NCBI RefSeq assembly: GCF_020745735.1
Contig: NC_083435.1
Span: forward strand, 11,067,201-11,131,200
DNA from: Hemiscyllium ocellatum
Taxonomy: Eukaryota
Direction of reading: 5' to 3'
Length of the DNA stretch: 64,000 bases
The notes under the pieces: generated by a model
The model's input: the letters and a program-made list of their open reading frames with translations, nothing else
Databases searched by the model: none
Told to the model about the DNA's origin: nothing
Shown here: positions 13,330-44,391 of the stretch, piece by piece
Numbering within the stretch: the first letter of the stretch is position 1
Layout: each line of letters opens with the position of its first letter
Program-made: the position numbers and the translations under genes

Positions 13330-15120
13330 GGTGGGCAGTGTCCTAGTGATATTGTCACCCGATTATTAATCCAGCAACCCAGAATAATGTTCTGGACACC
13401 TGGGTTCAAATCCTGCCATGGCAGATGGTGGACTTTGAATTCAATAAAAAAAATCTGGAATTACGAATTAACTGATGACCATGAAACCATTATCAATTGT
13501 CCGAAAAACCCATCTGGTACACCGATTTCCCTTTAGGGAAGGAAATCTGCCATCCTTAGCTGGTACGACCGACATATGACTCCAGAACCACAGGACTGTG
13601 GTTGACTCTCAACTGCTCTGTGGGATAGCTGAGCAAGCCACTCAGTTTTATCAATCGCTAGAAAGTCCCAACAAAGAAAGGAAACTGGACAGACCACCTG
13701 GCCTCAACTTTGAAACTGGAAAAGACAACAGCAAAAATACAAACAGCCCTGTCGACCATGCAAAGTTCTCCTTACCAATATCTGGGGGCTAATGCTGAAA
13801 TTTGGAGAACTGTTTCACAGACTAGTCAAACAACAGCATGACATAGTCATTCTTACGGAATCATACCTTACAGATAACACCCCAGACACCACCACTACCA
13901 TCCGTGGATATGTTCTGTACCACTGGGAGTCCAGAGGGAGTTGTCCTGGGAGTCCTTGACAGCGACTCTGGACCTCATGAAGTCAGGTGCAACATGGGCA
14001 AGGAATCTTCTTCCTTGTTACTATGTACCACCCTCCTTTGACTGATGAATCAGTACTCCTCCATGTTGAACAACACTTGGAGAAGCCTGAGGGTGCAAGG
14101 GTGCAAAATGGACTCTGTGTGGGGATTTCAATGTACATTACCAAGAGTGATTTGGCAGCAGTATTACTGATCAAGCTGGTTGGGTCCTAAACGATATAAC
14201 TGCAAAACTGGGTCTGCGGCAGATAGTGAAGGAAATATACTTGACCTCATCCTAGGCCAAACTGAAGACTGCAGATGCTGGAGATCAGAGTGGTGCTGGA
14301 AAAGCACAGCAGGTCAGGCAGCATCCGAGGAGCAGGAAAATTAGTGTTTCCTCAGATGCTACTTGGCCTCATCCTTACTAATCTGCTGGCTGCAGAAACA
14401 TCAGTCCATGACAGTATAAGTGAAAGTGACCACCATACTGTACTTGTGGAGAAGAAACCCCGCCTTCACATTGAGAATAACCTCCATCATGTTGTGTGGC
14501 ACTATCACTGTGTTAAATGAGACAGATTTGAACTGATCTAGCAGCACAAGACTGGGCGCGCATAAGGCGCTGCGGGCCATCAACAACAGCAGATCTGTAC
14601 TGCAGAACTGTACTCTAGCACAATCTGCAACCTCAAGGCCCGGCATATCCCCCCATTCAACCATTACCATCAAGCCAGGGCATCAACTCTTGTTCAATGC
14701 AGTGTGCAGAGGGCATGCCAGGAACAGCATCAGACAGACCGAAAAATGAATGTCAACCTGGTGAAGCGACCATACAGGACTATTTGCATGTCAAATAGCA
14801 TACACAGAAAGTGATAGGTAGAGCTAATTAATCCCACAACCAATGGTTCAGGTCTAAGGTCTGCAATGCTTCCACATCCAGTCGTGAATGGTGGTGGACA
14901 ATGAAACAACTCACTGGAGGAGGAGGCTTCACAAATATCCCCATCCTCAATGATAGGGAAGGCCAGAATATCAGTGCAAAAGATAAGGCTGATGCATTCA
15001 CAAAAATCTTCAGTCAGAGGTGCCGAGTGGATGATCCATCTCAGGCTCCTCCAGTGGTCTCCAGCTACCAATCTCCAGACAATTTGATTCATTCCACATG
15101 ATATCAAGGAACGGCTGGAT
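13330..15120 (+). mobile_element. 5' part of a degenerate non-LTR retrotransposon with tRNA-like head and APE endonuclease (clade unresolved)
   Basis: B-box-like gggttcaaatcc at ~13402; decayed APE motifs (HDIVILTESYLT, YHPP, GDFNVH-like, LDLIL, DHHTVL). Interrupted by a PLE fragment at 14254..14360. Confidence 0.7.
14254..14360 (-). mobile_element. PLE terminal fragment with 15-bp TSD
   Basis: ctgcagatgctggagatcagag...cagcaggtcaggcagcatcc terminus; flanks acttg(a/g)cctcatcct at 14239..14253 and 14361..14375. Confidence 0.75.
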
Positions 15121-15124
15121 GCAC

Positions 15125-15975
15125 TTGATATTGCATACACATATACTCACACATGTACCTTCTCACAGACTTATACCCCTTTACACTCACACTCACACTC
15201 ACACATATGCACACACTCTCTCACAGACAGACATAAACACCACAACCTCCCTCCCACACACACACACACACACATATAATTTTGTGGGGTGAATTTGTAC
15301 TTGGAGAATTACATTTTACTTTGCTCAAAAACTGCATGAATCCATCTAAGATTCTGTAAATGTATTTTTTAGAATAGTAAAACTCTAACTATTGAGGCAC
15401 AGACAGTCACACAGACGAGCTCACACCTTCAATACATTATCTTGGCTGGTAGTAACTGTTAAAGTAAAAAATGAGGTCTGCAGATGCTGGAGATCACAGC
15501 TACAAATATGTTGCTGGTCAAAGCACAGCAGGCCAGGCAGCATCTCAGGAACAGAGAATTCGACGTTTCGAGCATAAGCCCTTCATCAGGGCTTATGCTC
15601 GAAACGTCGAATTCTCTGTTCCTGAGATGCTGCCTGGCCTGCTGTGCTTTGACCAGTAACTGTTAAAGTTCACTTGAGAATGTAACTTTTAAAAAACTTC
15701 TGTGATTTACATATGAAAGAAGTGAAACTAACAGGGTCATTCTAACAGACGAGAGACTGAACAAACAAATAATCAAGGTATTTTTCAATGAATAATTTCA
15801 GTTACATCACACTGTAAACTTCTGCTATAAATTCTGTGTCTTACAATCGTGTACTCTACAACCACCCAATGAAGGTGCGGAGCTCCGAAAGCTATTGCTT
15901 CCAATTAAACTTGTTGGACTATAACATGGAGTTGTGTGATTTTAATTTTGTACACCCCAGTCCAACACCGACATC
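15125..15975 (+). mobile_element. PLE family B 3' region with degenerate HHR, interrupted by a family A hairpin insertion
   Basis: Ends aatgaaggtgcggagctccGAAAGCTAttgc...ggactataac...ccccagtccaacaccgacatctccaaatc, the same terminus as at 8.3, 48.6 and 49.2 kb. Confidence 0.6.
15466..15654. mobile_element. Fold-back PLE mini-insertion (family A) with perfect 15-bp TSD
   Basis: Arms 15510..15582 / 15588..15660, loop tcatc; intact HHR core on the minus strand; TSD agtaactgttaaagt at 15451..15465 and 15655..15669. Confidence 0.9.
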
Positions 15976-16264
15976 TCCAAATCGCAACTCACTACCACCT
16001 TCTCAAGGACAAATAGGGATGGGCTATCAATTCTGGCCATCCAGTGACGCCCAAGTCCCACAAATTAATTATAAAATGAGGGGGGTAAATATTCCCTGTT
16101 GCATTTTCATTGTATTTCCCAGGCCTACCAGGATCTGGTCTGAGAATAAAGATTGACAGCTCTTGCTGCATCTCCATATCAAAGATGGCCGAACCAATTA
16201 GCAACTTCCTCTCATGCTTTATAAAATGGGGTCTCTTTTTATCCATCTGCAGTGATTCATTTTA

Positions 16265-16600
16265 TATTAATTCACAGGATGAGGGTGTCACTGGCCAGTC
16301 CAGCATTTATTGCCTGTCCCTCATTGCCCAGAGGGCAGTTCAGAGTCAGCAGCATTGCTGAGAGTCTGTAGGCCACACACAGGGTAGGAATTGTAGTTTC
16401 TTCCTTCAAGGGCATCAGTGGACCAGCTGGCATTTTCATGACAATTGACATCAGTTTCATGGTCATCATTAGACTCTTAGTTCCAGACTTTTAATTGAAT
16501 CCAAATGCAACCATCCACCATGGTGGGATGTGAACCCAGGTCCCTAGATCATTACTTGGTTCTCTAGATTAGTTGTCTGGACATTGCTTCTCCATGTTGC
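16265..16600 (-). mobile_element. tRNA-derived SINE sharing head/body with 13330..13620 and tail with 15975..16070 and 51440..51535
   Basis: Minus strand: gggttcacatccc B-box, gatgaccatgaaact, gaaggaagaaact...ggcctacagactc, and 3' gggcaatgagggacaggcaataaatgctgg. Confidence 0.65.
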
Positions 16601-17019
16601 TGAACCCAAAGCCCAGAGAAGGTGAATTCCAATTCGACCAGTGCAGTTTGAGAATTGGAGAAATAGTTTGAAGGAAAATTAGTGAAATAAAGACATGACA
16701 TCAGCAAAAGTGACCGGAGACTGTCAAATTGTCTTAAACCCTGAGAAGGTCATGTGGTACAGTGAGTAACCTTACTGCCTCTGGGCCAGAAACTTCAGGT
16801 TCAAGTTCCACTTCCAAACTTGTATCTGTAGTGTTTCTGTCATAACATGGCCAAATGGATTGATCAATCATCTTGTAAATCCTTCTGATAAGCCAATGGC
16901 AGGGGGTGGGGTGGGGGAGGTTCTTGGTCAGCCAGAACAGGGTGATGAAGATAGACAGCCTGCCCATGCACTACTACACAGATACAAACACACAGAGTCT
17001 GCTGCACCCAGCATTTTAC

Positions 17020-17046
17020 CTGCATAGCTCCGTATCCTGTTCCACT
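17020..17046 (-). CDS. Gene B 27-nt microexon (E-WNRIRSYA)
   Basis: tctttgcag|AGTGGAACAGGATACGGAGCTATGCAG|gtaaaa; matches the W-x-R-x-x-x-Y-A exon that typically precedes B30.2 in butyrophilins. Confidence 0.9.
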
Positions 17047-17202
17047 CTGCAAAGATAACAGAAAAGGAGGAAAAAGATTAATCATCTGCAACACTCTCAA
17101 ACAGGACAACGGTCAAAGTACATCATGATTTACAGTTAAATAAGGACCTGGAGGGTTCACCGCAGTGGGGAGTGACCGGCTATCGCTTGACAATGTGCAA
17201 AG

Positions 17203-17204
<2 letters not shown>

Positions 17205-17254
<50 letters not shown>
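17205..17254. repeat. (CA)n microsatellite
   Basis: About 25 uninterrupted AC units. Confidence 0.95.
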
Positions 17255-17256
<2 letters not shown>

Positions 17257-17601
17257 CTTTAGATTGAGTAAAGGTAGAGATTAACATATCATTAATTTTC
17301 ATATTTTCTTGTTCTATTTGGCCAACATTATCATGGGCAAACATCAGAAGTATACATACTGATCGGTGAAGTTCCTTTCATTATGTTCACAGACAGAACA
17401 TACCTGACTGGACCAGAGGCCTCCATTGCTCTAAAAGGAAACAGAGAATTGGAATGATCTGAATAAATCCCACTCAACAGACTTCACTTCATTAACAAAT
17501 TTTACTTTCATACCAGAGTTTTCTAAAATGAAGATACTGGTACTGAATATGAGGTGAAAGTCCAATCCCCGAGTGTGGAAGTTTTGGGAATAATCTCTTA
17601 C

Positions 17602-17628
17602 CTAACTTCTGCTGAAGGTTCACAATTT
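17602..17628 (-). CDS. Gene B 27-nt microexon (E-IVNLQQKL), heptad-like linker
   Basis: ttttcttttcag|AAATTGTGAACCTTCAGCAGAAGTTAG|gtaaga. Confidence 0.88.
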
Positions 17629-17769
17629 CTGAAAAGAAAAACGGACAAGGGTGAAATTTGTCATATGTAGAGCAAGGTAATTCAAGTCTTACATTAATTA
17701 AACAGAAATATCACTGAAAAACTGAACATTACTTGATTGGAATTTTTTTTTGAAGGTGAATATATTTTA

Positions 17770-18110
17770 CAAAGTAATTTGTTTTTTAAAAAAATCCATT
17801 ATGAAGGGAATAGACAAGATAAAAACAGGGAGGTTGTTTCCACTGGCGGGTGAAACACAAACTAGGAGGCATAATCTCATAATAAAGAGGAGTGGATTTA
17901 GGATTAAGTTGAGAATGAACTTCTTTTCCCAAAGGGTTGTGAATTTGTGCAATTCTCTTCCCAGTAAAGCAGTTGAGGCTGTCTCAGTGATTGTTTTTAA
18001 AGCAAAGATAAATAGATTTTGAACAGTAAATGAAGTAAAGGTTATGATGAATGGGCGAGTAAGTGGAGCTGCGTCCAAGAAAAAGATCAGCCATGGTCTT
18101 CTTCTCTCAA
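17770..18110 (+). mobile_element. CR1 LINE 3' fragment
   Basis: MKGIDKIKTGRLFPLAGETQTRRHNLIIK...FFSQRVVNLCNSLP. Confidence 0.75.
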
Positions 18111-18241
18111 GTGGCTAGATGGGCCTATCTGCTCCTATTTCCTGCACTGTTATGTCCTTACTAATCTAGTGTGGCATTGCTCACCTGTCAGATAATATAC
18201 TACATATACATTATACATCAGCAACTTATATTTATAGAATG

Positions 18242-18454
18242 GCTGAAAATGTGTTGCTGGTTAAAGCGCAGCAGGTCAGGCAGCATCCAAGGAACAGGAA
18301 ATTTGACGTTTCGGGCTAAAGCCTCCTGATGAAGGGCTTTAGCCCGAAACGTTGAATTTCCTGTTCCTTGGATGCTGCCTGACCTGCTGTGCTTTAACCA
18401 GCAACACATTTTCAGCTCTGATCTCCAGCAACTGCAGACCTCACTTTTTACTCC
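18242..18454. mobile_element. Fold-back PLE mini-insertion (family A) with perfect 15-bp TSD
   Basis: Arms 18242..18323 / 18335..18416 around loop tcctgatgaag; plus-strand HHR CTGATGA-agggcttt-agccc-GAAACGTT; TSD tatatttatagaatg at 18227..18241 and 18455..18469. Confidence 0.9.
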
Positions 18455-19646
18455 TATATTTATAGAATGCCTGTTTTTCTGTTAAAAATCTCAAAATCAT
18501 TCATACACACGTTATGATTAAAATATGACAAAACTATACAGTGAGATGTTAGGTCAGGTGATCAAAGCTTTTTCAGAGGTAGGTTTTTAAGGAGTGTCTT
18601 TAAGGGAGAAAGTGAGATGGGGGTGGGGGGGGGTATGGGTTGGAATTGAGTCACCTGACACTGCACCTCCAAATGAAGGAGCAAACATAATTGGGGTGTG
18701 CTAGAGGACAGAATTAGAGGAGCACAGATAATTTGCAGGGTTGAAGGGCTGGAGGAGTTACAGAGCAGTGAAGGTAAGGACATGAAGGGATTGGAGAACT
18801 GGGTGAGAAATTAGGAAATAAAACATTGTAAGGTCAGCAAGCAGGAGAGTGGGACTTGGGATGAGTGAAGACACAGGCAGCAGAGGGTCAGGTGGCCTCA
18901 AGTTTACAGGTTAGAATGTGGGACACCAGTCAGAGAGTGTTGAACTAGAGAAAACTGTGCTGTAAGGAACACATTGTTCCTCTGCTCTAGTGAGGTTGTA
19001 ATTCCCCACAACAGAATGTCAGAAGGTTAGAAATAATCAGAAGATACGGAAATATGGCAGATGTAATATTATTTGACTATTTGTAGAATTGTGAAGAGTA
19101 TTGACTGTGAAAGCAATTTGTTCATAAACACTTGTCCCGATAAAAAAGAAGTTGTGTGTTTCACTCAGTTACAGGCCGGAAGAGGAGTGTATGTTAATCT
19201 GAAGGTTATCTAGGGAGAAACTGACTATTTCAATTTACGTACAATATTGACAGTCTCCTACTACTTCAGATTCTCAATCCCAACTCACTGGCTGTTCTGA
19301 AATTCATCTTTCCCATTCACAACTCTGATGGGGAGAAAGTTCTCACTCAACAGATTTTAAATCTTCTGAATTCTTCACGTCTTCAATCCAAAATAGAGAA
19401 AAAATATTAGAGCCTTCAGGTGGGATAGTGCTGGGAAGAAAATCCATTGTGATCAGACTGACAGCTCACACCAACTATAGAAATGCGAACCTTTCTTATT
19501 GTTAACACATGAAAACCTTCAACCTATCCAGTGATATTCTTCTTTAGCAAATAATTATTTAATTTCTTTTCAAAAAGATTTTTGGACCCTTTCGACAGCG
19601 GTTAGTTTTTGCAAAAAGTTCTCAGGGTTTGAGCCGAGTTTGTCAC

Positions 19647-19766
19647 CTTGAACCTTATTCTGTAATCTCCGATGGTACCACACTGTGAGAGCGACTGCTG
19701 CAACAGTCAGAGCAAACAGGATCCAGAACGCTATCAGCCATCCGGAAACATTGGGGAAGAAGGAAT
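19647..19766 (-). CDS. Gene B transmembrane exon (120 nt)
   Basis: tacag|AT..: D-SFFPNVSGWLIAFWILFALTVAAVALTVWYHRRLQNKVQ; donor CAAG|gtgaca; same length as the gene A TM exon. Confidence 0.9.
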
Positions 19767-20565
19767 CTGTATCGAGAGAGAGAGAGGACAGGAGGAAAGG
19801 GAGAGAAATGAAAGGAAAGGGAGAAGGTGGTGAGAAAGAGATAAATGGGAGAAATGGCAAAATTGAAGAGGAAAGGGTGGGGGTAAAGGTAGGGGGAGAG
19901 TGGAGAAGGGACAAAGAGTTGGAGAGAGACGGGGAGAATGGGGATACAAAGGGAGAGAGAGGCGGTGGAGAAGTGGGAAAAGAGAGAGTGAGAAAGCGAA
20001 CCATTCAGCTGTTTGAATTAATACAAACACATTGTTAGACCCTGTACTCAACTTCAATCACCCCTCTTTCTCTATTAGCTTCTTTTCCCCCATTACCCAT
20101 TTCCCTCTTCCAACCTCCGTTCCGCTATCTCTGTCTCCCTCCAACACCCACTCTCTGTCCATTACCTCACTGCCTTTTCGCAAACTCAAATATTCCCACT
20201 CACCCCCCCCACCGTTCCATCACACTTACTCCTTCCGCCCAATTTGCATTGCATCCTCTCTTTCTCCCTCCATCACACCCTCTCCTTCTCCCTCGATCAC
20301 TCTCTCCTACTCCCTCCATCACACCCTCTCACTCTCCCTCAATCTCCATCACTCCCTCTCTCCTGGTAAAATGCCTTTTGTTGCCACAAGGGGCAAGCTG
20401 TAGCCGTGAGAGACTGACCTTTGCCACTTGTCTCTGACCAGGGCCACGAGGCGCCTTTTCAATCACAGCATTTCCTCAGGATTTTATATTTCTCTATCAT
20501 CTGATCCAAGTCCTTTCCCCCAGCCCACTGAGTATCTGGGAAAGTCTCCTCCCACCATGACAGAC

Positions 20566-20850
20566 CTGCGATCTGGATGTGAGCCTCCTGTGTCTCCTTC
20601 AGGATCACATTGTTAATGACACATCTGTACTTGTTGGGGGACTGCTTGGGGATCTCGATGGAGCTGCTGACAGTGAACAGCCCCTGAGGGTCTGACTGGT
20701 ACTTGGTTTGCTGCTGGGCCGTCACGTTCCCACCATCTCCGTCTACCCACAGAATGGTCGGCTGTGGGTACCATCCATCGGATCTGCAGCCCAGTCTGAT
20801 GCCATTGCCCGTTTGGCCCTCCATCTCGATCCTTGGCTGGTGGCCTGTAC
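20566..20850 (-). CDS. Gene B IgC exon (285 nt)
   Basis: ttgcag|GT..: GTGHQPRIEMEG...RLGCRSDGWYPQPTILW...GLFTVSSSIEI...YRCVINN...QIA; donor GCAG|gtctgt. Confidence 0.93.
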
Positions 20851-21329
20851 CTGCAATCACAGAGACATCATGAAGGGGAGTAGGCCGCAAAGCCTGTCAT
20901 GGCCTCCCTACACCACTCGGTCAGATTGCAGCTGACCTGTACTTTCATAATCCCTTCATGCAGGGTAACCAGAGTTCGATTAGAATCTGTCAGGGCAAGT
21001 TGGTGGGGGAGGGCAGAGGAAACCTCACTCGGAGAGATGAGAGAGAAACAGGCCAGACAGGAAATACCCACAGGTCAAATTAGTCACCAGGTTAGGTTCT
21101 ACCAACTGGAATTATTTCTGGGCCTTCAAACTGGCTGCACATAAAAACATTTTGTTTTAAAAAGGCACATTATAAAGTTCATAAGCACTGCAAAAACCTT
21201 CAACTAACTGGAAAGTTTTGCTTTCATTTAAAAAAAAAGGAGGTCCTGCTGTTAAGGCAGAGATGAACAAACATGTTTGCTCCAACATGACAAATTAGTC
21301 TGTGGAATCTATTCCCCAGAATCAAAAAA

Positions 21330-21900
21330 CTACAAGAATATTCTGTGTCCAGTTCTGGAATCCACATTCGAGTATGGATGTGATTTCTCTGGAGAGGGCT
21401 CAGGAGAGGTTTTTTTTGCCTGGTCTGGAGAGTTATGTTTGTGAAGAGAGATTGGATAGACTGTGGACAAGAACAGAAACTGCTGGAACAACTCAGATGT
21501 ACAGCATGGAAACAGACCCTTCGGTCCAACCCGTCCATGCTGACCAGATATCCCAACCCAATCTAGTCCTACCTGCCAGCACCCGGTCCATATCCCTCCA
21601 AACTCGTCCTATTTATATACCCATCCAAATGCCTCTTAACTGTTGCAATTGTACCAGCCTCCACCACATCCTCTGGCAGCTCATTCCATACACGTACTAC
21701 CCTCTGCGTGAAAAAGTTGCCTCTTAGGTCTTTTTTATATCTTTCCCCTCTCACCCTAAACCTCTGCCCTCTACTTCTGGACTCCCCGACCCCAGGGAAA
21801 AGACTTTGCCTATTTATCATACCCATGCCCCTCATAATTTTGTAAACCTCTATAATGTCACCCCTCAGCCTCCGACGCTCCAGGGAAAACAGCCCCAGCT
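21330..21900 (-). mobile_element. CR1 3' fragments (21480..21900 minus; 21330..21470 plus)
   Basis: RQSLFPGVGESRSRGQRFRVRGERYKKDLRGNFFTQRVVRVWNELP on the minus strand. Confidence 0.8.
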
Positions 21901-21959
21901 GGGCACCATCTGTGGAAGAAAGGAGTATTACTCATTGACGTCCAGTGACTCTTCATCAG

Positions 21960-24215
21960 AAGTTCAAAAGAAACATTATTTATGCGGAAGACAATGTTCA
22001 GTTTGGGGGAAGGAGTGGAAATGGGGAGATTGGAGGGGTGCAAATTGCTGGAGATGGAGCCCAGAGACAGGCAGACAGAGAGATGAAAGTAGTGGGTAAA
22101 CAAGGAGATTACGGATGGCAGGCCAGGACAGAATAGAAGCTGAATAAGTGATAATAGGGGCAAAGAGAAGGAGAAAGTGTGTGAGCTGTATGATAGCAAT
22201 CCAACTAGTTTGATAACAGATCTTAGAGTATGTGGGAATAGGTGACTGTGCTAAAACCAACCCCTGTCAGTACAGGACCTGGTGTGGTATAGGTAAAAAC
22301 ACTGAAAGATGGAATCAGACTCTAAAGTTATTGAACGTGATGTTGAGCCCTAAAGGCTGCAGTGTCCCAAAGCTGAAAATGAGCTACTGTTCTTCAAGCT
22401 TGCACTGGAGGCTCACTGGAACACTGCAGCAGGCCTGAGACAGAGATATTGGCCAGGCATGTGGAAATGGCAACTGGAAGCTCAAGGTCATTCTTGCAAA
22501 TAGAATATTGATGTTTTGCAATGTGGTCACCCACTTTGTCTTTTGATTTCCTAATTTAGAAGGGACTGCACTGTGAACAGCAAATACCAGATTGAGTGAA
22601 GGGCAGGTAAATCATTGCTTCAGCTGGAAGATATTTCAGGGGGCCTGGATCCAGAGGAAGGAGAAGGTATATGGGCAGGTTTTACATATTCTCTGATTCC
22701 TTGGGAAGGTGCCATGAGAGTGTGGGGAGATTTGGGAGTGGACGAAAAGTGGGCCAGAGTCTCCTGGAGGGATTGGCCCTTGCAGAGCTTTCAATTTCCA
22801 CCCTACCGTCACGTTCACCTGGTCCATCCCTGACTCCCCCATTCCCTTCTCAAATTCCATTTTGGGGAATAGGATGGCTACGAACAAACTCACCATCTCC
22901 CATAGTGACCATGTCTACACATCCTCTCACCCTGCCTCTCGTAAAGACTCCATCCCATTGCCGCAGTTTCTCCACCTCCATTACATCTGTTCTGATGATA
23001 CCACCTTCCACATGGTGCTGCCTCCAAAATGTCCACCCTTTTCCTCAATCAAGGATTCCCCACTACTTGGGGTTGCAGGGCCCTTCGCCATGTTTAACCT
23101 ATCTCCTGTTCTTCACCCATACCCCTTTTCTCTTCCCTCCCACAATGACAGTGTCACTGTACTCCTCATTTACCACTTGACCAGCTTATGCATCGAAACA
23201 ATCTTTAGCTGCCATTTCCACCATATCCAGCAGGATTCTATCACCAGACACATATTCCCTTCTCCTACCTTGTCAGCTTTCCACATGGACCATTCCCTCC
23301 GCCACACACTGGTCTACTCCTCCTTCACTTCCAACACCCTCTCAGACCCCAAACACTTTTCCATGCAATTGCAGAAGGTTTAACACCAGCCTGTTCACCT
23401 CCCCCTCCTCACTATCCAGTGTGCCAGACATACCTTTCTGGTAAAGCAGTAATTTACCTGCACCACTCCATCTAATCTGCTGTATTTGCTGTTCACAATG
23501 TGGTCTCCTCTACATTAGGGAGATGTAAAGCAAACTGGGCAACCACTTTGCAAAACACCTATTTTCTGTCCACAAAAATGACACTAAGCTTCTAGTTGCC
23601 TGCCTCTTCAACACACCACTGCATTCTTTAGCCAACATTTCTGTTGCAAGTTCAGCATAGTCTTCCAGACAGCATCAGCACAAACTCAAAGAACAGCATC
23701 TCATTCACCATTTGGGAACACTGCAGCCTCTGGGACTCAAGGTCAAGTTCAATAAATTTGATCATTTCATTTTTTTTAAACTCACTCACACCAGGTCTGT
23801 CCTGATATGTGTTGCTTTAAGCAGTCACCCATGCTCACGGAATTCTAGAACCCACTGTCAACACACATGCATTGCATTCAGTACAGCTCACCTATTTCCC
23901 CACTTATCACTCTTATTATCACTTCTTCTTCTGTCCTGAATTTCTATCCACAGCCTCCTTATTGACATACACCTTTCATCTCTCTCTCTCTTTCTCATGG
24001 ACTCCATCTCCACCTATCCACTCATTTCTCCCCGCACCCTTCTCCAAACTTCAGTTTCAGCATACTTACCACATGTTCCTAATTGCTAACTGCTCTAATC
24101 AAGAGTCACTGGACTCGAAAGGGTAACACTGCTTTCTTCTCATTGGAGACACCAGATCTGCTGAGATTCTCCAGGAATTTCTGCTTTTGTTTCAGGTCAC
24201 CAGCGTCTGCAGTTC
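21960..24215. mobile_element. Old PLE copies back-to-back (minus ~21960..22790; plus ~22790..24215), degenerate
   Basis: Plus: FHPTVTFTWS, DHVYTSSHPASRKDSIPLPQFLHLHYICS, decayed GIY-YIG and terminal HHR remnant (~24105); minus: decayed GIY-YIG/3' region. Confidence 0.75.
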
Positions 24216-24419
24216 TTTATTTATAATTGATTAGACTAGAGTTAGTTTCATCAAAGCAGAGGAGACTGGGGAGCTGATTGAGATGTCACACATTATGAGG
24301 GGCATAGGTTGGTTACATTCTCTTGGTAGAGGGATCAATGACCAGGGGACATAGATTTAAGGTAAGGGACCGGAGGTGTCCAGGGAATGTCCAGAAAAAT
24401 GATTTCATGCAGAGCGAGA

Positions 24420-34560: not shown

Positions 34561-35049
34561 TTTCCATCGTTCGCTGTTTCAAGGAGAGGAAGGTCACACG
34601 CTCTCTTCCCCTAATCCCCCCCAATGTTAGCTTGTTTGTAAATACATTGTCTTTATGTCTTGCACACTCGTGTCCCCTCACAGGAAGTTCAGGACACCGA
34701 GAGAGATCGATTGGCCCCTCAAGTTGGTGAACACCCACCCAGTCTGAACCCACCTTCCACAACTTTATCTGCAGCCTCAGGTACATCGATTAAAAAATTT
34801 GTTATGAGGAGGGTTTCTGCCTCCATTCCCCTTTCAGAGAGTGAGGTCCTGATCCGGTTCTGGGTCTAAACACTTCGCTAATGTCCTTCCATTAATTTAC
34901 ATTCCTGGCCGTTGGTTATTACCCTGTCTGTTACAGAATCTGTCTAAAATGTTTACGAAGGCCACTTCCGTTATTAATATATCTCACTTAAACATCTCCT
35001 TAGCCTCATGCCGTTCAATCAAAAAAGCCCACCCCATTGTTAGATGCCT

Positions 35050-38000
35050 TCAGTCCGAAAATACTGTTTTAAATCTACTCTGTACCCCTGACTGGTGTGA
35101 CCCCATCCTTCCTGTAACGAGTTCAGAAGTTGTGCACAGTACCATCTGCAGTCTTAGGAGAGGTTTGTACTGGAATAATTCCTCAGTTTTTACACTCTGG
35201 GCTATGGCAAATAAAGTGTCCCTTTCCTGAGAGAAACAGATAGGCAAGAAGGAAGAGGGATATCGACCACACAGAGATATTTACGTTTTAACTTGGAGAA
35301 ACATCATGTGTCAGTGCATTCTTGGTGGGCTGTAGGTCCTGTTCCCATGCTTTCATGTCATTTTTTCTTTATTTATTATTTTGTATCTAATTTTTGGACC
35401 AGCCCTGCTACCAGCAGAGGCATGTGGACATGCAAGTCAAGCTTCCTTCGTTCAGAAGAAAGATCTGAAACACTAACTCTGCTTTCTCTCTGCGGCTGCT
35501 GCCAGGTCTGCTGTGTTTCTCCAGCAATTTTTATTTCTGTTCTTCTGCACTTCTTTAGTTTTCAGCGTCCCACTCTTTGTGATGTGTTCCCCTGCCTTTC
35601 TCACTCTCCCTAAACACCTCACACCTCTCTGAATTGAACATCCATTTGCTATTGTTTGTCCCCTTCTGTTGGTGTTCAGAGGGGCAATTTAAATGTGAGC
35701 TGATTTTAAAGGCATGTAAGGATCTGGGTGCGACGTTAAATTTTAGCTCTGTCTGATTTTCATCCTGATGAATTCCTTGCTGGAAAAACCTGAGTTCCAC
35801 TTCCTAACCAATCAGCACCCTTTTCTCCGGACAAACATGAGGTGATGTAATTTTGGAAGTCAATTGCAGGAAGAAGTATACAATGAATAGCCAGACACTG
35901 AGAGGCATTGAAATACAGGATCTCAGGGCATAAGTTCACAGCTCCCTGATAGTGACAACATAAGTAGATAAAGTGCTAAAGAAGGATACAGATTGCTTGC
36001 CTTCATCAGTTTCGACATTCAGTATAAAAGTTGGCAATCACATCGCAACAGTTAAAACATTAGACTTAAAGTAGTATACAGTTCTAGTCATACACCCTAA
36101 GTACAACTTGGAGGATTGGAGAGGGTGCAGAAGAGCTTTACCATGATTTTGCCTGAATTAGTCTAGTAGCTTGAAGGAGACCTTGGACAAACTTACATTG
36201 TTTCCACAAGAACATAAGAGGTCAAGTGGCACCTTGAGAGAAGTGTCAAAAGTTTTGTCAGGTATGGATACAATGCATAGACTGATAGAGTCATAGAGAT
36301 GTACAACATGGAAACAGACCCTTCGGTCCAACCCATCCATGCTGACCAGATATCACAACCCAATCTAGTCCCATCTACCAGCACCCTTCCCATATCCTTC
36401 CAAACCCTTCCTATTCATATACCCATCCAAAGACCTCTTAAATGTTGAAATTGTACCAGCCTCCACCACATCCTCTAGCAGCTCATTCCATACACGTACC
36501 ATCCACTGCGTGAAAAAGTTGCCCCTTAGGTCTCTTTTATATCTTTCCCCTCTCACCCTAAACCTATGCACTCTAGTACTGGACTCCCTGACCCCAGGGA
36601 AAAGACTTTTTCTATTTATCCTATCCATGGCCCTCATAATTTTGTAAACCTCTATAAGGTCACCCCTCAGCTTCCGATGCTACAGGGAAAACAGCCCCAG
36701 CCTGTTCAGCCTCTCCCTGTAGCTCAGATCCTCCAACCCTGGCAACATCCTTGTAAATCTTTTCTGAACCTTTTCAAGTTTCACAACATCTTTCTGACAG
36801 GAAGGAGACCAGAATTGCTCGCAATATTCCGACAGTGGCCTAACCATTGTCCTATACAGCCACAACATGACCTCCCAACTCCTGTACTCAATACTCTGAC
36901 CAATAAAGGAAAGCATACAAAACACCTTCTTCACTATCCTATCTACCTGCGACCCCACTTTCAAGCAGCTATGAACCTGTACTCCAAGGTCTCTTTGTTC
37001 AGCAACACTCCCAAAGACATTACCTTTAAGTGTATAAGTCCTGCTAAGATTTGCTTTCCCAAAATGCAGCACCTCACATTTATCTGAATTAAACTCCATC
37101 TGCCACTTCTCAACCCATTGGGCCATCTAGTCCAGATCCTGTTCAAATCTGAGGTAACCCTCTTCGCTGTCCACTACACCTCCAAACTTGGTGTCATCTG
37201 TAAACTTACTAACTGCACCTCTTATGCTCGCATCCAAATCATTTATGTAAATGACAAAAATAGAGGGCCCAGCACCGATCCTTGTGCACTCCACTGGTCA
37301 CAGACTCCATTCTGAAAAACAACCCTCCACCACCACCCTCTATATTCTACCTTTGAGCCAGTTCTGTACCCAAATGGCTAACTCTCCCTGTATTCCATGA
37401 GATCTAACCTTGCTAATTAGTCTCCCATGGGGAACCTTGACGAACGCCTTACTGAAGTCCATATAGATCACATCTACTGCTCTGCCCTCATCAATCTTCT
37501 TTGTTACTTCTTCAAAAATCTCAATCAAGTTTGTGAGACATGATTTCCCACGCACAAAGCCATGTTAACTATCCCGAATCAGTGCTTGCCTTTCCAAATA
37601 CATGTACATCCTGTCCCTCAGGATTCCCTCCAACAACTTGCCCACCACCAAGGCTAGGCTCACTAGTCTACAGTTCCCTGGCTTGTCTTTACTACCCTTC
37701 TTAAACAGCGCCACACGTTAGCCACCTCCAGTCTTCCGGCACCTCACCTGTGACTATCGATGATACAAATATCTCAGTAAGAGGCCCAGCAATCACTTCT
37801 CTAGCTTCCCACTGAGTTCTCAGGTACACCTGATCAAGTCCTGGGGATTTATCCACTTTTAACCATTTCAAGGCATCCAACACTTCCTCCTCTGTAATCT
37901 GGACATTTTGCAAGGTGTCGCCATCTATTTCCCTACAGTCTATAACTTTCATATCCTTTTCCATGGTAAATACTGATGCAAAATGTTTATTCAGTTTTTC

Positions 38001-41000
38001 CCCCATTTTCTGTGGGTCCACACAAAGTCCACCTTGGTGATCTTTGAGGGGCCCTATTCTCTCCCTAGTTACTCTTTTATCCTTTGTAAAAATCCTTTGG
38101 ATTCTCCTTAATTCTATTTGCCAAAGCTATCTCATGTCCTCGTTTTGCCCTCCTGATTTCCCTCTTAAGTATACTCCTACTGCCTCTATACTCTTTTAAG
38201 GATTCACTCGATCTATCCTGTCTATACCTGACATATGCTTCCTTCTTTTGCTTAACCAAACCCTCAATTTCTTTAGTCATCCAGCAGTCCCTTTACCTAC
38301 CAGCTTTCCCTTTCACCCTGACGGGAATATATTTTCTCTGGATTCTTGTTATCTCATTTCTGAAGGCTTCCCATTTTCCAGCGATCCCTTTACCTGCAAA
38401 CATCTGCCTCCAATCAGCTTTCAAAAGTTCTTGCCTAATACATCAAAATTGGCCTTTCTCCAATTTAGAACTTCAACTTTTAGATCTGGTCTATCCTTTT
38501 CCATCACTATTTTAAAACGAATAGAATTATGATCACGGGCCCCAAAGTGCTCCCCCACTGACACCTCAGTCAACTGCCCTGCCTTATTTCCCAAGAGTAG
38601 GTCAAGTTTTGCACCTTCTCCAGTAGGTACATCCACATACTAAATCAGAAAATTGTCTTGTACACACTTGAGAGATTCCTCTCCATTTAAACCTTTAACA
38701 CTATGGCAGTCCCAGTCATTGTTTGGAAAGTTAAAATCCCTTACCATAACTACCCTATTATTCTTACAGATAACTGAGATTTCCTTACAAGTTTGTTTCT
38801 CAATTTCCCTCTGAATATTAGGGGGGTCTATAATACAATCCCAATAAGGTGATCATCCCTTTCTTATTTCTCAGTTCCACCCAAATAATTTCCCTGGATG
38901 TATTTCTGGGAATATCCTCCCTCAGCACAGCTGTAATGCTATCCCTTATCAAAAATGCCACTCCACCTCCTCTCTTGCCTCCCTTTCTTTTCTTTCTGTC
39001 GCATTTGTATCCTGGAACATTAAGCTGCCAGTCCTGCCCATCCCTGAGTCACGTTTCCATAATTGCTATGATCCCAGCCCCATGTTCCTAAGCATGTCCT
39101 GAGTTCATCTGACTTCCCTGTTAGGCCCCTTGCATTGATATAAATGCAGTTTAATTTATTAGTCCTACCTTGTCCCTACCTGCCCTGACTGTTTGACTCA
39201 CTTCTGTTCTCAGCTGTACCCCTCTCAGATCGAGCTCATTCCTCGCTATCTCCCTGGATCCCATCCACCCGCCTTACTAGTTTAAATCCTCCCAAGCAGT
39301 TCTAGCAAATTTCCCTGCCAGTATATTAGTCCCCTTCCAATTTAGGTGCAAACCGTCCTTCTTGTACAGGTCACCTTTCCTCTAAAAGAGATTCCAGTGA
39401 TCCAAAAATGTGAATCCTTCTATCATATACCAGCTCCTCAGCCATGCATTCATTTACTCTATCCTCCTATTCCTGCCCTCACTGGCTCGTAGCACTGTGA
39501 GTAATCCAGATATTACTACCCTTGAGGACCTCCTTTCGAAATTTCTGCCAACTGTCTGTAATCTCCCTTCAGACTCTCAACTTTTTGTCAGTCTTTTTCT
39601 GTGATAGAAATGTCAGATATTAGGGGGTGCAGATTTAAGATGGGAGGAGACAAGATGTGAGAAAAGGTTTTTCCACAGGCAGTGGTAGATGTAGGGAACA
39701 CGCTGCCAGGGGAGCACAGTCATTGTATGGCCAAAAAGCCTGTTCCTGTGCTGGACTGTCATCTGTTCACTGGATGTTGTGATGATCTCAAATTTAGCAT
39801 TCTTGCATTTGTCCTGAATGTATGCAAATTGAAGAGCTTCAGAGACACATTTCTCTTTTCAGGGTAATCCTGCAGTGTTGAATACAGCTGGTTGTTCTCC
39901 ATGGTCCATTGATATTGGCAGAAGCACAGATTGTTCTGAACAAACAGGTTCATGCTTGAGCTGTTGCACAATCATTTAAAAGAACGTCAACACTGGTCAA
40001 TGAAAATTGGCTCTTTTCATGATTCAGGTTTGTCTCTGTTAAATAAAATGTGGATATTAAAGCAAATGTAACTTAAGGCAATCCAGTCCAATCTGAGCAT
40101 GCACAGGTCAGTGAAATTGCTTGCATTTGTGGTTGTGGTTCCAGTTAATGTATGAAAGATATTGTTTGTCCAGGTGAGATATGAGCCTGAGGATCAAAAT
40201 TCAGAACAGCAGCATTCAATTCTTGATGGACAGGTTTGGATTTTACAACCAGTACCGTCACTTTAAATAACCCCATATCTTGACAATGAAACTGAGATTC
40301 TCAAAATGCAGTCATTAGCTAAGCTCACGTGCTCTGCATTATTAGATCAGGATTACCAAAATAATACTATATTAAAGTGAAGAGGTAAATATAGGAACAT
40401 AGGAATCATGGTAGGGCATTCAACCCCTTAAGCCTGTTTCACTGTTCATTGAGATCTGTGGCCTAACTCCATATACCTAGAAAATACCTATCTCAGATTT
40501 AAAATTAAAAACTTATCTGGCATCCACTGACACTTGTGAAGAGAGTTCCAAAGCTCTGTGTGTAGACCTTTATGCGTAGAATGCTTCCTAATGTCTCTTC
40601 TGAATGGTCCAGTCCTAATTCTCACACTATGCCCATTAGATTTAGAATTCCCCAACCAATGCAAATAGTTGATGTTTACCCACCCTGTCATTTCCTATTC
40701 ATATGCTGAGAGGAAATGGTCTAAAATGGGTGCAGGTGGAGATGGAAGGTTAAGACTGTGCATTATGCTCATTCTGTATCTCCAACTGTCCATCTCTCTT
40801 TGTCTCCCCCTTTCAGTTCGGGAACAATCTGAGCCTGGAGAGATTAGATTTTATGTACATTCCCTCTAAAAATGGATGGAATTGTTTTCCACTTCTTTTT
40901 GAACGATGAGACAGAAGGTTCAAAGGACTTAACAGCAGGAGTAGGTCACTTGGCCTATCAAGCTGTCTGATATTCGCGGAGATCTCACCTCCACTTTCCT

Positions 41001-41760
41001 GGCTGTACAGCTTAACCTTCTATTCCCTTGCCTAAGAAAAATATATCAAACTCAACTCTGGATAATTTTAAAGACCCAGTACCCTCTTCTTTCTTGGGAA
41101 GACAATTCCTCACTTTGGTGATTAAAAAAAAAACAATTCTCCCCTATCTTTAAAGGGAAACTTCTCATTCTTAAAGTATGTCACATAGTTTTAGACTACC
41201 TCCCACAACCTGCAAGAGGAATCAACCTTTAGATTTCTACCTTATCCAGTCCCTCAAGGTCCTATAGCATCCCTCATTTCACCAAGACAATCCTGCCCTA
41301 TCCATTCAAATCTCTACGTTCTCTCATTCTGCTTCCAAGATCCTGGTGTGTCCCATTTCTCAACTACTGTGCCATTTTATCATTGTCTGTAGGCAATGGA
41401 ATACCACCAATTGCACATACCCCTGTAAACCACTCACCATTTTGATATCACGGTTCCTTCCTTGTTATTGTGGGCAATATAGTGGAATTGCCTCCCCAAT
41501 AGTATTGAGTGCACCACAAAAAAGGATTTCAGCATCACACCACATCTCAATCCAGCCAACTCAGCTAACCAACTTTCTGATCAGGCATGGCATTGATTAT
41601 ACTGCATAGTATTCCTGAGGGTTTTACCACTTAATCTCTGACCCCTAACTGCCCCAGCTCTCTCTCAGCATTGGTTACCCTCAACAACCATTGTCATGGT
41701 AAGCACCAGTCCCCAGCCAACCACAAATTGAACAGAATCTTCCATTCCTGATTGGATGTT
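35050..41760. repeat. Paralogous block, copy 2 (homologous to 3330..7260), expanded by CR1 insertions 35830..39600
   Basis: Same anchors as copy 1, in the same order and orientation. Confidence 0.8.
36280..39590 (-). mobile_element. CR1 LINE, ~3.3 kb, same family as 24420..27990, disrupted
   Basis: MRGKSCLTNLIEIFEEVTKKIDEGRAVDVIYMDFSKAFVKVPHG; QWVEKWQMEFNSDKCEVLHFG; 3' tail ...ctctatgactc. Confidence 0.92.
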
Positions 41761-42830
41761 CCAATTGCTTATGGAAATTGGCAAAAATGGCAGGGTAGTT
41801 GAGAAATGAGATCTTGGAATCAGGGAATAAAAGTGTTGATAGAAAAGCCTTGACATGCACCCAATGGTTTCTCTCTCATTCTGTGTTTGGCTGCCTGTAC
41901 AATCACAATTCCAGGAGAGTCTGGATCAATCCTGGAGGATTAGTGTCTTGGCTTTTCCCCCTGTGTTTCAGTGTGGATGCAGTAGAATAGAGAAGACTTT
42001 CCAACTCCAAAAATTCATTTCTGTTTTATTAAAAATATGGAGCTTAGTCCTTCAAAGATTAGAATAAGCAAATAACATCTTTTACGTAGTAAAACATTAA
42101 AGGCACTTCACAGGATTGGAATCGTACAAAACACAGCATCAAGCACAATGGATTGATGATATCAGATGGTCATTAACTCAGTCAATGGAACTTTAAGAGA
42201 GTCTTGAGTTTTGAAAATGTGGCAGAGGGTTAGAGGTAGTTGAGAGATGATCCCCAATGATGAAGTGATTAAGAGCAATGTCACCTCTCCAGAGGCCAGA
42301 ATAAGATAAACAAAGACGTCTTTTTTTTGGGGGGGGTGTGGGGAGGGGGAGTGTCAGAGTTCTGCGACTGGGGAAGAATATACCAATGGGAAGGATTGGT
42401 GACACATAGATGGATTTAAAAATAATAATGAGAACTTTAAAACCTGGGAGTCAATGCAAGTCAGCGAGCACTGGGGCCAGAGGAGAACGGGATTCGCTGC
42501 AAATAGAGGACCCTCTGCAGTTTTGTGGACAACCTCCGATTTATGGAGAATACTACGTGAGGGAACCTGCCAGGAACACACTGGAATAGTCAAGCCCAGA
42601 GGTGACCAGGGTGGGGATGAAGGTTTCAACAGTGGATGAGCTGAGATGGGTGTGGAATCTGGGGCTGTTATGCCAGTGACTGACTACTGTATATCCATAT
42701 GCCTGGTAACAGTCTGAGAGGAAGTCAACATGAAGTCAAATATGACAAAGATTCCTGGCTCTTTAGTGAAAAGGGAGTGAGGTGGAAGTAGGCAGTCTTT
42801 TTGAGGGTGCTTGGAAGCTCATCTTTACAT

Positions 42831-43110
42831 TAGGAATGAGGAGGGTGTGCCAAGCAGGCTAAGATAAAAGGTAGGGAGGAGGGACTTGGGGGAGGGTCGT
42901 AGGGAATGCGATAGGTGGAAGGAGGTTAACCTCCTCTCCTCCCTACTTTTTATCTTAGCCTACTTGGCACACCCACCTCATTCCTGAAGAAGGGCTTATG
43001 CCCGAAACATTGATTCTCCTTCTCCTTTGATGCTGCCTGACCTGCTGCGCTTTTCCAGCAACACATAGTTAAGCTCTGATCCCCAGCATCTGCAGTCCTC
43101 ACTTTCTCCG
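42831..43110. mobile_element. Fold-back PLE mini-insertion (family A) with 15-bp TSD
   Basis: Arms 42833..42881 / 42936..42984; HHR CTGAAGA-agggcttatgccc-GAAAC begins at 42984; TSD agctcatctt(t/c)acat at 42816..42830 and 43111..43125. Confidence 0.85.
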
Positions 43111-44391
43111 AGCTCATCTTCACATCAAATCACGAGCAGACTGGAATTATCTGAGATTGTCGTCATTAAGGTGACACACGGATCTTATAACTCAGGAACT
43201 GCATTTGGAGTGGAAGTGAAAACAATGGGTTCACTCATCCCAAAATTTAATTGGAGAAATGTTCTTGCTCACTCAGGACTGGCAATCCTACTAACTGCCT
43301 GATCATTTAGCATCAGAACAGGGGTCAAGAGAGCTGGGCAGTGAGGGGGAGCAGGGGATTGTCAATGTTCAGAGGAGAGTTTGTTGGATAAGGACACTAA
43401 GCGCTAGTCGCTGGCCAAGAGGAATGGTGAGCAGTCTTAGCAGACAAGAGCAGGGACCCAATACTGTTACACTTTATGTGGTTCAGCCAAATAAGATGGC
43501 AAATGGTTAAACCACTTGTCTAACTCATCTGAATGCTCTAGGATAACAGGGCAGGGATGAGGAGCAGATTGGGCTAATGACCATGGTGAGAGAGAGAGAG
43601 AGAGAGAACAGTAAGTTACAAGGGGCATTGAAAGCTGAAGTGAATTGAATGAAAGGTCTCACATGTTCAGAACCATGGACTTTTGGAGCAGGTAGAAATT
43701 GTCTTTTGGATTGAAATCGCCAGAGGAGCAGAAATTCAACACAAAATGTGCAAGATGGCCTCTTACTGTGCTTAAAATAACTCATCTTTCTAAGTTTAGT
43801 CATAGTTCGGTATGAGCTTTAAACGTTTAGTTCAACATTCAACACTTAACTGCAGTGACAACTAAATTTTGCTTTACAGAAGGAGTAGATGTATTAGTGT
43901 TAGATAAAGGAGCATTTATAGCTCAAGCAGAGACAGGGATATTAATCTGTGCCCCAAGAGCATTAATCTGGTTACTAGTCACTACCAAAAATCATCGTCT
44001 CCATTTATATCTGCACCATCTCAGCAATTCTCGTGTTTCTCCAGCTTCCCCTTAAGCAGGTTATTATTCATTTCAACTGCTCCATTAGGAATTATTAGGA
44101 ATTACTTTTGAGTCATGGCACTGATGTTTGGTCTAGTACATTGCCTTTCAAGTTAATACCTTCAAGATGGGAATGGGCCTGAGTAGGGCGAGTGTGACCC
44201 ATTCTCACATGGGGGAAAGGGCTCAGCATGTACAAACTTCTTGTGTCAGCCACACAGGTGCCAGTGTGGATTCACTTCGCTGAGCATGACAAATCTTGTA
44301 AACCATTTAAAAATAAGAATGGCAATGTCCATGTCACTTATTGTCATCTTGTTCCCTTTGCAACAGTGAATTAGTTTCACTCCTTCTCGAT

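What the first reader, a model, noticed from the sequence alone, without database searches (positions are those of the whole stretch)
14239..43125. Recurring 15-bp target-site duplication across independent PLE mini-insertions
Seen: four separate short insertions have 15-bp TSDs: 14239/14361 (1 mismatch), 15451/15655 (perfect), 18227/18455 (perfect), 42816/43111 (1 mismatch). Two more have similar but decayed repeats (8261/8514, ~49040/~49263). Each TSD brackets the entire hairpin, so both arms were laid down in one event. Inference: a GIY-YIG endonuclease with a fixed 15-nt stagger, plus a stereotyped abortive pathway (initiation ~90-130 nt 3' of the HHR, short extension, fold-back, resolution). 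The products are 100-300-bp ribozyme-bearing hairpin elements that look like MITEs but are retro-derived. This is my best candidate for an undescribed system in the window.
Basis: partly seen in the sequence, partly recalled or inferred. Interest (0 to 1): 0.82.

Follow-up and report, generated by a model that had tools for sequence, protein, structure and literature searches.

The report
Short hairpin Penelope retroelement insertions
The 15-bp flanking repeats are real, but the short hairpin insertions are heavily truncated copies of a Penelope-like retrotransposon with that family's already described head-to-head, one-arm-shorter layout, not a new system.

Summary
Observation confirmed. Four family-A insertions carry flanking direct repeats of 15 bp (one may be 16) that abut the element ends. 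Such repeats occur at about 1% of random placements. For 18242-18454, a contig from a related species skips exactly 228 nt (213-nt insert plus one 15-bp copy), so this is a true target-site duplication (TSD) bracketing both arms. A second relative also lacks the insert.

Interpretation partly supported. The hairpins are 3' ends of a Penelope-like element (PLE) whose RT + GIY-YIG ORF lies at 1098-2813, followed by a minimal hammerhead core and a 128-nt terminus. An inverted 5'-truncated copy with a 30-40-bp "tail" on one arm only is the published PLE architecture (Craig 2021, Arkhipova 2013). Frangieh 2024 showed in vitro that a PLE protein cuts and extends both strands from two internal RT start sites about one tail apart.

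A fixed 15-nt stagger rests on n=4 in one family. Family B gives 16-19 bp and 11-16 bp. Unchecked notes from other windows of this genome say 9-17 bp. The scan had already noted such mini-elements elsewhere in this genome.

Possibly new: the tight 15-bp mode, microhomology where the short arm meets the TSD, and hairpin turns clustering at the hammerhead core. Verdict: new member of a known kind, modest interest.

The parts
1..1105 (-). Inverted arm of a young PLE copy. It is cut off by the window start and is 100% complementary to 1142-2246.
1106..3079 (+). Direct arm of the same PLE. ORF 1098-2813 (RT + GIY-YIG), upstream region 2814-2950, minimal hammerhead core 2951-2978, terminus to 3079. 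The 36-nt loop 1106-1141 belongs to this arm.
14238..14375 (-). Insertion A1. TSD 14238-14253 / 14360-14375 (16 nt, 1 mismatch). The 106-nt insert 14254-14359 is a tail-bearing terminus with an aberrant 5' end about 12-17 nt long.
15451..15669 (-). Insertion A2. TSD 15451-15465 / 15655-15669 (15/15). Tail-bearing arm 15466-15582, loop TCATC 15583-15587 inside the CTGATGA core, short arm 15588-15654. The first six TSD bases (15655-15660) match the element 5/6.
18227..18469 (+). Insertion A3. TSD 18227-18241 / 18455-18469 (15/15). Short arm 18242-18323, 11-nt loop at the hammerhead core, tail-bearing arm 18335-18454. The site is empty in two related species.
42816..43125 (+). Insertion A4. TSD 42816-42830 / 43111-43125 (14/15). 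Inverted arm 42831-42925, turn at TTAA 42926-42929, direct arm to 43110 with a 38-nt internal deletion. The outer end of the inverted arm lies in the hammerhead core.
8261..8532 (-). Family B hairpin B1. Tail-bearing arm 8279-8407, short arm 8420-8512, decayed TSD of 16-19 nt at 8261-8278 / 8513-8532.
49037..49274 (+). Family B hairpin B2. Short arm 49053-49134, 7-nt loop just 5' of the hammerhead core, tail-bearing arm 49142-49263. The TSD is weak, 11-16 nt.
48470..48669 (+). Family B hairpin B3. It turns at the hammerhead core with a 6-nt loop, and the short arm ends about 36-45 nt before the tail end. It is old and no TSD is detectable.
21890..24225 (+). Old PLE of another family (E). This is a kilobase-scale head-to-head copy whose inverted arm is about 60 nt short of the tail end. 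No TSD is detectable.
46498..46734 (+). Family A copy that is not a hairpin. It ends at the inner (tail-less) terminus.

Best explanation
These are ordinary insertions of endonuclease-bearing Penelope-like retrotransposons (PLEs) of the Penelope/Poseidon type, at the extreme of 5' truncation.

Inferred steps:
1. The element's GIY-YIG endonuclease nicks both target strands about 15 bp apart. This leaves 3' overhangs, and filling them in gives the TSD.
2. One 3' end primes reverse transcription at the outer start site, about 100 nt 3' of the hammerhead cut. This produces the tail-bearing arm.
3. The other 3' end is extended on sense-polarity element sequence from an inner site. The inner site is usually 36-50 nt upstream and often lies at a few bases of microhomology with the end of the TSD. 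This produces the short inverted arm.
4. The two arms meet head to head where cDNA synthesis stopped. In the mini-elements that point is within about 0-20 nt of the 5' edge of the hammerhead core.

Shown here: TSDs, single-event insertion, PLE origin, arm geometry.

Not decidable from sequence: whether the second arm is copied from RNA (priming from both nicks) or from a folded-back first cDNA. I give dual priming about 0.4 and fold-back about 0.4 within this explanation.
For: PLE identity:
- The ORF at 1098-2813 hits RVT_1 at 33 bits and GIY-YIG at 22 bits.
- 1788 homologues have E <= 1e-30. The best are shark PLE-like proteins.
- The ORF is followed by CTGATGA-A-GGGC..GC(T/C)C-GAAAC-GTC and the 128-nt terminus that forms the hairpins.

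TSDs and single event: and the empty site.

Geometry:
- All seven hairpins have one arm that reaches the terminus and one that stops short. The shortfall is 36-60 nt, and about 120 nt in A4.
- Loops are 4-11 nt in six of the seven.
- Turns lie at or near the hammerhead core in A2, A3, B2 and B3, and about 20 nt upstream in B1.

Microhomology at the short-arm/TSD junction is 5/6 (A2), 5/6 (B1), 4/6 (A4, B2) and 2/6 (A3), read.

Literature:
- PMC8557442: an inverted 5'-truncated copy plus a 30-40-bp tail at one end.
- PMC3846280: a 31-bp tail, an inverted pLTR 37 bp shorter, and palindromes at the inverted junctions.
- PMC11167929: the PLE protein cleaves and extends both strands, reverse transcription starts at two internal sites 111-118 nt into the ORF, the tail is the stretch between them, and the ORF starts in hammerhead stem II.
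Against: - Only four clean TSDs, all from one family, in 64 kb.
- No Rfam hammerhead model reaches threshold, so the ribozyme assignment rests on reading the core motifs.
- The full 5' part of the element is not in the window, so I could not show that the shark ORF starts in stem II as in the Anolis element.
- Nothing here shows nicking positions or which template the second arm was copied from.
- A3 shows no microhomology at its short-arm junction.
Confidence: 0.85

Rival explanations
1. A ruler-like enzyme with a stereotyped abortive pathway. The PLE endonuclease, perhaps as a dimer, always cuts with exactly a 15-nt stagger. A dedicated abortive route turns at the ribozyme and makes mini-hairpins as a distinct product class.
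For: - Four of four scorable family-A events have 15 bp, one possibly 16.
- Four to five of seven hairpins turn within 0-20 nt of the hammerhead core.
- The quasi-palindrome CCT-GATGA-AGG sits exactly at the A2 turn.
- A dimer is predicted for the Anolis protein (PMC11167929).
Against: - B1 gives 16-19 bp and B2 11-16 bp.
- The literature reports variable PLE TSDs, 8-10 bp in rotifers (PMC3846280, PMC8557442).
- Unchecked first-reader notes from other windows of this genome list 9-17, 10-17, 9-16, 13-15 and about 14 bp.
- Other hairpins in the window turn at arbitrary places: 1106/1142, the TTAA at 42926, and about 22750.
Confidence: 0.2
2. Self-propagating non-autonomous hairpin elements, SINE- or retrozyme-like. 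The hairpin itself is the transcribed master and is copied as a unit by PLE machinery.
For: - The elements are very abundant. Hundreds of thousands of contig pieces per run map to the family-A positions.
- Non-LTR retrozymes are proposed PLE-dependent non-autonomous elements (bioRxiv 10.64898/2026.07.22.740005).
Against: - The window's hairpins differ in turn point (5-nt against 11-nt loop, TTAA).
- They differ in where the short arm ends. In coordinates of the PLE copy at 1106-3079, the ends are about 3030, 3041 and 2959.
- Kilobase-scale copies show the same layout.
- A hairpin RNA would give symmetric arms, not one arm short at the outer end.
Confidence: 0.07
3. MITEs, or palindromes made after insertion by DNA-level events such as replication slippage or an inverted duplication of a simple truncated insertion.
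For: They look like MITEs: 100-300 bp, inverted arms, flanking direct repeats.
Against: - The arms are unequal at the outer end, so there are no terminal inverted repeats reaching both ends.
- 15 bp is outside the usual range for DNA transposons.
- The sequence is the 3' end of an RT-encoding element.
- The empty site in a relative lacks both arms and has one repeat copy.
Confidence: 0.03

Closest known systems
Canonical endonuclease-bearing Penelope-like elements of the Penelope/Poseidon clade: insertion architecture with pLTR, inverted 5'-truncated copy and 30-40-bp tail (Evgen'ev & Arkhipova 2005; Arkhipova 2006, 2013; Craig et al. 2021)
   Same: - RT plus C-terminal GIY-YIG with cysteines between the two motifs.
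- Hammerhead motif near the terminus.
- Heavy 5' truncation.
- Head-to-head inverted copy.
- An extension of about 36-44 nt on one arm only.
- Small palindromes at the inverted junction.
- TSDs.
   Different: - Most copies here are only 100-300 bp, so nothing but the terminus is left.
- TSDs in one family cluster at 15 bp, whereas published PLE TSDs are called variable (8-10 bp in Adineta vaga).
PAc, the Poseidon-type PLE of Anolis carolinensis, characterised in vitro (Frangieh et al. 2024, PMC11167929)
   Same: - The outer terminus lies about 115 nt after an ATG in hammerhead stem II (ATG 2965, end 3079). In PAc, reverse transcription starts 111-118 nt into the ORF.
- There is a second start about one tail-length upstream.
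- In PAc both target strands are cut and extended, which would give head-to-head copies.
   Different: - I could not confirm that the shark ORF starts at that ATG.
- The paper reports no stagger or TSD length and does not discuss mini-hairpins.
- It finds no homology between the RT start site and the cleaved DNA, whereas several short-arm junctions here show microhomology.
L1 twin priming (5'-inverted L1 insertions).
   Same: The top-strand overhang primes internally, often at microhomology. The inverted and direct segments sit inside one TSD.
   Different: In L1 the two segments come from adjacent parts of the RNA that barely overlap. Here the two arms copy the same region and so form a hairpin.
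Minimal hammerhead ribozymes of PLEs and non-LTR retrozymes (Cervera & de la Pena 2014, PMC4209133; Li et al. 2026 preprint)
   Same: - CUGANGA core.
- An extra base before G10.1.
- G10.1-C11.1 pair.
- GAAA.
- A one- or two-base-pair helix III with a palindromic centre (ACGU, AGCU, AACGUU).
- Pairs of such motifs on opposite strands 100-700 bp apart were already reported.
   Different: Retrozymes are tandem arrays, whereas these are single TSD-flanked hairpins. In the hairpins that turn inside or at the core, the helix I 5' strand is missing.

Membership tests
Endonuclease-bearing Penelope-like element (PLE) | Reverse transcriptase domain | tested here: met
   RVT_1 at 33 bits against a cut-off of 29.6 on the ORF at 1098-2813. 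1788 homologues with E <= 1e-30 carry PF00078, PF28514 and PF26215.
Endonuclease-bearing Penelope-like element (PLE) | [quoted passage not shown] | tested here: met
   The Pfam GIY-YIG hit scores 22.0 bits, just under the 22.6 cut-off. The motif IIYCIRCTRCGLLYIGET...REHL is read directly. The criterion comes from PMC8557442.
Endonuclease-bearing Penelope-like element (PLE) | Inverted 5'-truncated copy adjacent to the direct copy, with a 30-40-bp tail on one end only | tested here: met
   All seven head-to-head copies have exactly one arm reaching the terminus. The shortfall is 36-60 nt, and about 120 nt in A4.
Endonuclease-bearing Penelope-like element (PLE) | Target-site duplication made on insertion | tested here: met
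   Four TSDs of 15-16 bp. An orthologous empty site holds one copy.
Minimal type I hammerhead ribozyme of PLEs | Core CUGANGA, an extra base, a G10.1-C11.1 helix II, GAAA, and a short palindromic helix III followed by the cleavage base H | tested here: met
   A pattern search finds six intact cores, four in family A and two in family C. They read CTGATGA-A-GGGCTTATGC(T/C)C-GAAA-CG-TC.
Minimal type I hammerhead ribozyme of PLEs | Match to a curated hammerhead covariance model | tested here: not met
   No Rfam hit at gathering score. No hammerhead hit at E <= 10 in the native context 2900-3100. Inside hairpin A3 there is only a 22.5-bit Hammerhead_3 hit against a gathering score of 48.5.
Minimal type I hammerhead ribozyme of PLEs | Self-cleavage | not testable with these tools
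   This needs an in vitro transcription and cleavage assay. The Anolis ribozyme cleaved only when the protein was present (PMC11167929).
MITE | Terminal inverted repeats reaching both ends, and a short TSD typical of a DNA transposase | tested here: not met
   One arm carries 36-44 unpaired nt at the outer end (more in A4), and the TSD is 15 bp.
L1-type twin-priming inversion | Inverted and direct segments derived from adjacent, essentially non-overlapping parts of the template | tested here: not met
   The arms overlap over their whole shared length: 73, 82 and 1105 nt at 99, 96 and 100% complementarity.
Non-LTR retrozyme | Tandem head-to-tail arrays of hammerhead units | tested here: not met
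   The hairpins are single units. The only two same-strand cores lie 123 nt apart in the complex locus 12882-13200. I did not run a dedicated tandem-repeat scan.

The most novel reading that the evidence does not exclude
The shark PLE enzyme measures a 15-nt stagger between its two nicks. It always starts one cDNA at the outer site and the other at the inner site. The hammerhead core, through a defined RNA 5' end or its CCU-GAUGA-AGG quasi-palindrome, is where the two cDNA ends are joined. Mini-hairpins would then be a programmed main product of PLE activity rather than random truncations. They would give a genome-wide in vivo record of priming from both strands.
Probability: 0.2. Interest if true: 0.5.

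Novelty: new member of a known kind. Interest (0 to 1): 0.3.

Why it matters
How PLEs integrate is still unclear. The only in vitro work (2024) showed cutting and extension of both strands and two internal start sites. It did not link these to the inverted-repeat insertions or give the stagger.

Abundant young mini-insertions in a shark genome are compact natural read-outs. Each one records the stagger (TSD length), both initiation points and the point where the two arms were joined.

A census of them could test whether the two nicks are a fixed distance apart and whether the second arm starts by microhomology. For annotation, these hairpins should be masked as Penelope fragments. They should not be called MITEs or microRNA precursors.

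Tried and rejected
- Rfam at gathering score on the whole window: nothing. With permissive E-values there were only sub-threshold microRNA-like hits and one Hammerhead_3 hit in a hairpin. In the native context there was nothing relevant.
- Paralogous empty sites inside the window: none.
- More shark DNA for a larger TSD sample.
- An exact-pattern scan of metagenome contigs gave 48 loci. All were chance matches to the 19-mer only.
- I first read A4 as proof of two independent RNA-templated arms, because its inverted arm holds about 48 nt absent from the direct arm. A gapped alignment showed instead a 38-nt deletion in the direct arm between CCTCCT microrepeats, with the real turn at TTAA. I withdrew that argument.
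- The abundant 'loose ends' at 14290 in the read table could mark a tail-less terminus used genome-wide. However, A1 has its own 10-nt deletion there, so I do not use them as evidence.
- Pfam on the short LINE-like pieces flanking A1 gave no hit. That A1 splits a LINE endonuclease motif (LDLIL / LGLILTNL) is my own reading only.
- TSD searches at nine other PLE-derived loci gave nothing above chance.


Full report
**What is in the sequence**

- 14238-14253 / 14360-14375: 16 nt with 1 mismatch.
- 15451-15465 / 15655-15669: 15/15.
- 18227-18241 / 18455-18469: 15/15.
- 42816-42830 / 43111-43125: 14/15.

A search that knows only the approximate insert ends finds these same repeats as the best flank match. 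In 3000 random placements with the same geometry, about 1% reach such scores, and those include true repeats elsewhere in the window.

Of the two "decayed" cases, 8261/8513 is significant (score 14, p about 0.01), but it is 16-19 bp long with an indel. The case at 49037/49259 is weak (score 8.5, p about 0.08) and 11-16 bp long.

**Independent proof of insertion**

I laid public contigs of the same species and of two related species on 12850-18600. This gave an orthologous empty site for 18242-18454.
- A 574-nt contig of relative B runs 18054-18226 and continues directly at 18455. It skips 228 nt, which is the 213-nt insert plus one 15-bp copy.
- A contig of relative C also lacks the insert. 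Its site differs by about 9 nt.

So the duplication arose with the insertion, and both arms came in together.

For 15466-15654, several contigs in all four runs join 15448 to 15661. These are paralogous copies of the repeat that received the insertion. They lack the hairpin and hold TGTTAAAGT once.

**What the elements are**

The window begins with a young Penelope-like element (PLE).
- The ORF at 1098-2813 has RVT_1 and GIY-YIG hits.
- It has 1788 homologues with E <= 1e-30. The closest are from Chiloscyllium, Rhincodon and Stegostoma.

Downstream lie a pyrimidine-rich stretch, a minimal hammerhead core (CTGATGA-A-GGGCTTATGCTC-GAAA-CG-TC, 2951-2978) and a terminus ending at 3079. The hairpins A1-A4 are copies of the last 100-230 nt of this element.

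This PLE is itself a head-to-head copy, with arms 1-1105 and 1142-2246 at 100% complementarity and a 36-nt loop. The loop belongs to the direct arm.

A second, old PLE at 21890-24225 has the same layout. Profile searches and a core-motif scan give 17 PLE-derived loci of four terminus families, and no further family with an intact core.

**Geometry**

All seven head-to-head copies have one arm that reaches the terminus and one that stops short.
- Family A: 38 nt short (A3) and 44-50 nt short (A2).
- Family B: about 36 nt short in three copies.
- Family E: about 60 nt short.
- A4: about 120 nt short. Its inverted arm starts inside the hammerhead core.

Loops are 4-11 nt in six of the seven copies. 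The turn lies at the 5' edge of the hammerhead core in A2, A3, B2 and B3, and about 20 nt upstream in B1. It lies at arbitrary points in the larger copies.

A2 turns exactly in the quasi-palindrome CCCT-TCATC-AGGG. A4 turns at TTAA. Its apparent 54-nt loop is a 38-nt deletion in the direct arm between CCTCCT microrepeats.

Where the short arm meets the TSD, the last TSD bases resemble the element sequence just beyond the arm. The match is 5/6 in A2 and B1, 4/6 in A4 and B2, and 2/6 in A3, against about 1.5/6 expected by chance. The boundaries in the decayed family B copies are uncertain, so this is suggestive only.

**Comparison with what is known**

This layout is the published signature of endonuclease-bearing PLEs.
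- Craig et al. 2021 (PMC8557442) describe heavy 5' truncation, an inverted 5'-truncated copy next to the direct one, and a 30-40-bp tail often at one end only. They call TSDs variable in length.
- In Adineta vaga the tail is 31 bp, the inverted pLTR is 37 bp shorter, TSDs are 8-10 bp, and palindromes at the inverted junctions were read as self-priming (PMC3846280).
- Frangieh et al. 2024 (PMC11167929) showed that purified Anolis PLE protein cleaves and extends both target strands. Reverse transcription starts at two internal sites 111-118 nt into an ORF that begins in hammerhead stem II, and the tail is the stretch between the two starts.
- In the shark element an ATG sits in the stem II loop (2965), and the terminus is 115 nt further on. 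Family A inner ends lie 38-50 nt before it. That the ORF starts at this ATG could not be checked, because the 5' part of the element is not in the window.
- Cervera and de la Pena 2014 (PMC4209133) already noted pairs of minimal hammerheads on opposite strands 100-700 bp apart, and many single motifs from truncated PLEs.

**Mechanism**

Shown: retro-derived PLE termini, inserted in one event, with a 15-bp TSD in four family-A cases.

Inferred:
1. The two nicks lie about 15 bp apart and leave 3' overhangs.
2. One overhang primes at the outer start site.
3. The other is extended on sense-polarity element sequence from an inner site, sometimes through microhomology.
4. The arms join where cDNA synthesis stopped.

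Priming from both nicks on RNA would leave the same final sequence as fold-back of the first cDNA followed by annealing of the top-strand overhang to the folded-back strand. I could not separate the two. The in vitro data favour the first. The short loops at arbitrary internal positions are most simply explained by the second.

**Is the stagger fixed at 15?**

Four of four scorable family-A events say 15, one possibly 16. That is tighter than the literature's "variable". But the sample is four events from one family.
- Family B gives 16-19 and 11-16 bp.
- First-reader notes on other windows of this genome list 13-15, 10-17, 9-17, 9-16, about 14 and 15 bp. I could not check these, so they count only as leads.

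My attempts to fetch more shark DNA failed. I rate a strong mode near 15 bp as likely and a strictly fixed stagger as unlikely.

**Verdict**

The reading as an undescribed system is not. These are new members of a known kind. The modestly new points are the tight TSD mode, the junction microhomology and the turn hot spot at the ribozyme core. A genome-wide census could test all three.

Noticed in passing
window 1-2246: Perfect 1105-nt inverted repeat with a 36-nt loop at the very start of the window. It is a PLE head-to-head copy whose left arm is cut by the window edge, so its TSD cannot be read. With 100% arm identity it is either very young or a fold-back assembly artefact.
   Followed up: partly
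window 12882-13200: Complex family C locus. Two intact hammerhead cores lie on the same strand 123 nt apart (12944-12977, 13067-13100). A 55-nt unit is repeated at 100% identity, and its 3' end coincides with the predicted ribozyme cut (GAAATGTTA|). There are also 89-nt inverted arms at 13001-13089 / 13104-13192. The part from 13070 on is also present in both related species.
   Followed up: partly
window 18267-18390 and other hairpins: The hairpins give sub-threshold Rfam hits to the microRNA precursor families mir-1791 (42 bits), mir-722 (30) and mir-2007 (28). Such PLE hairpins could be mis-annotated as microRNA genes, or could be the origin of some.
   Followed up: no
window 3650-3920 and 35400-35640: Two copies of one larger repeat that embeds a family C-like hammerhead unit. 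Their flanks are homologous, so they are not independent mini-insertions.
   Followed up: partly
window 46498-46734: Family A copy that is not a hairpin and ends at the inner (tail-less) terminus. It lies between two non-adjacent LINE-like coding fragments.
   Followed up: partly
window 13900-15100: Decayed LINE-like ORF. A1 splits the motif LDLIL / LGLILTNL...SDHHTVLVE. A CA-rich microsatellite follows at about 15120-15290. Pfam gave no hit on the short pieces.
   Followed up: partly
window 42926-42945: There is a 38-nt deletion in one arm of hairpin A4 between CCTCCT microrepeats. This is an example of how such palindromes decay.
   Followed up: yes
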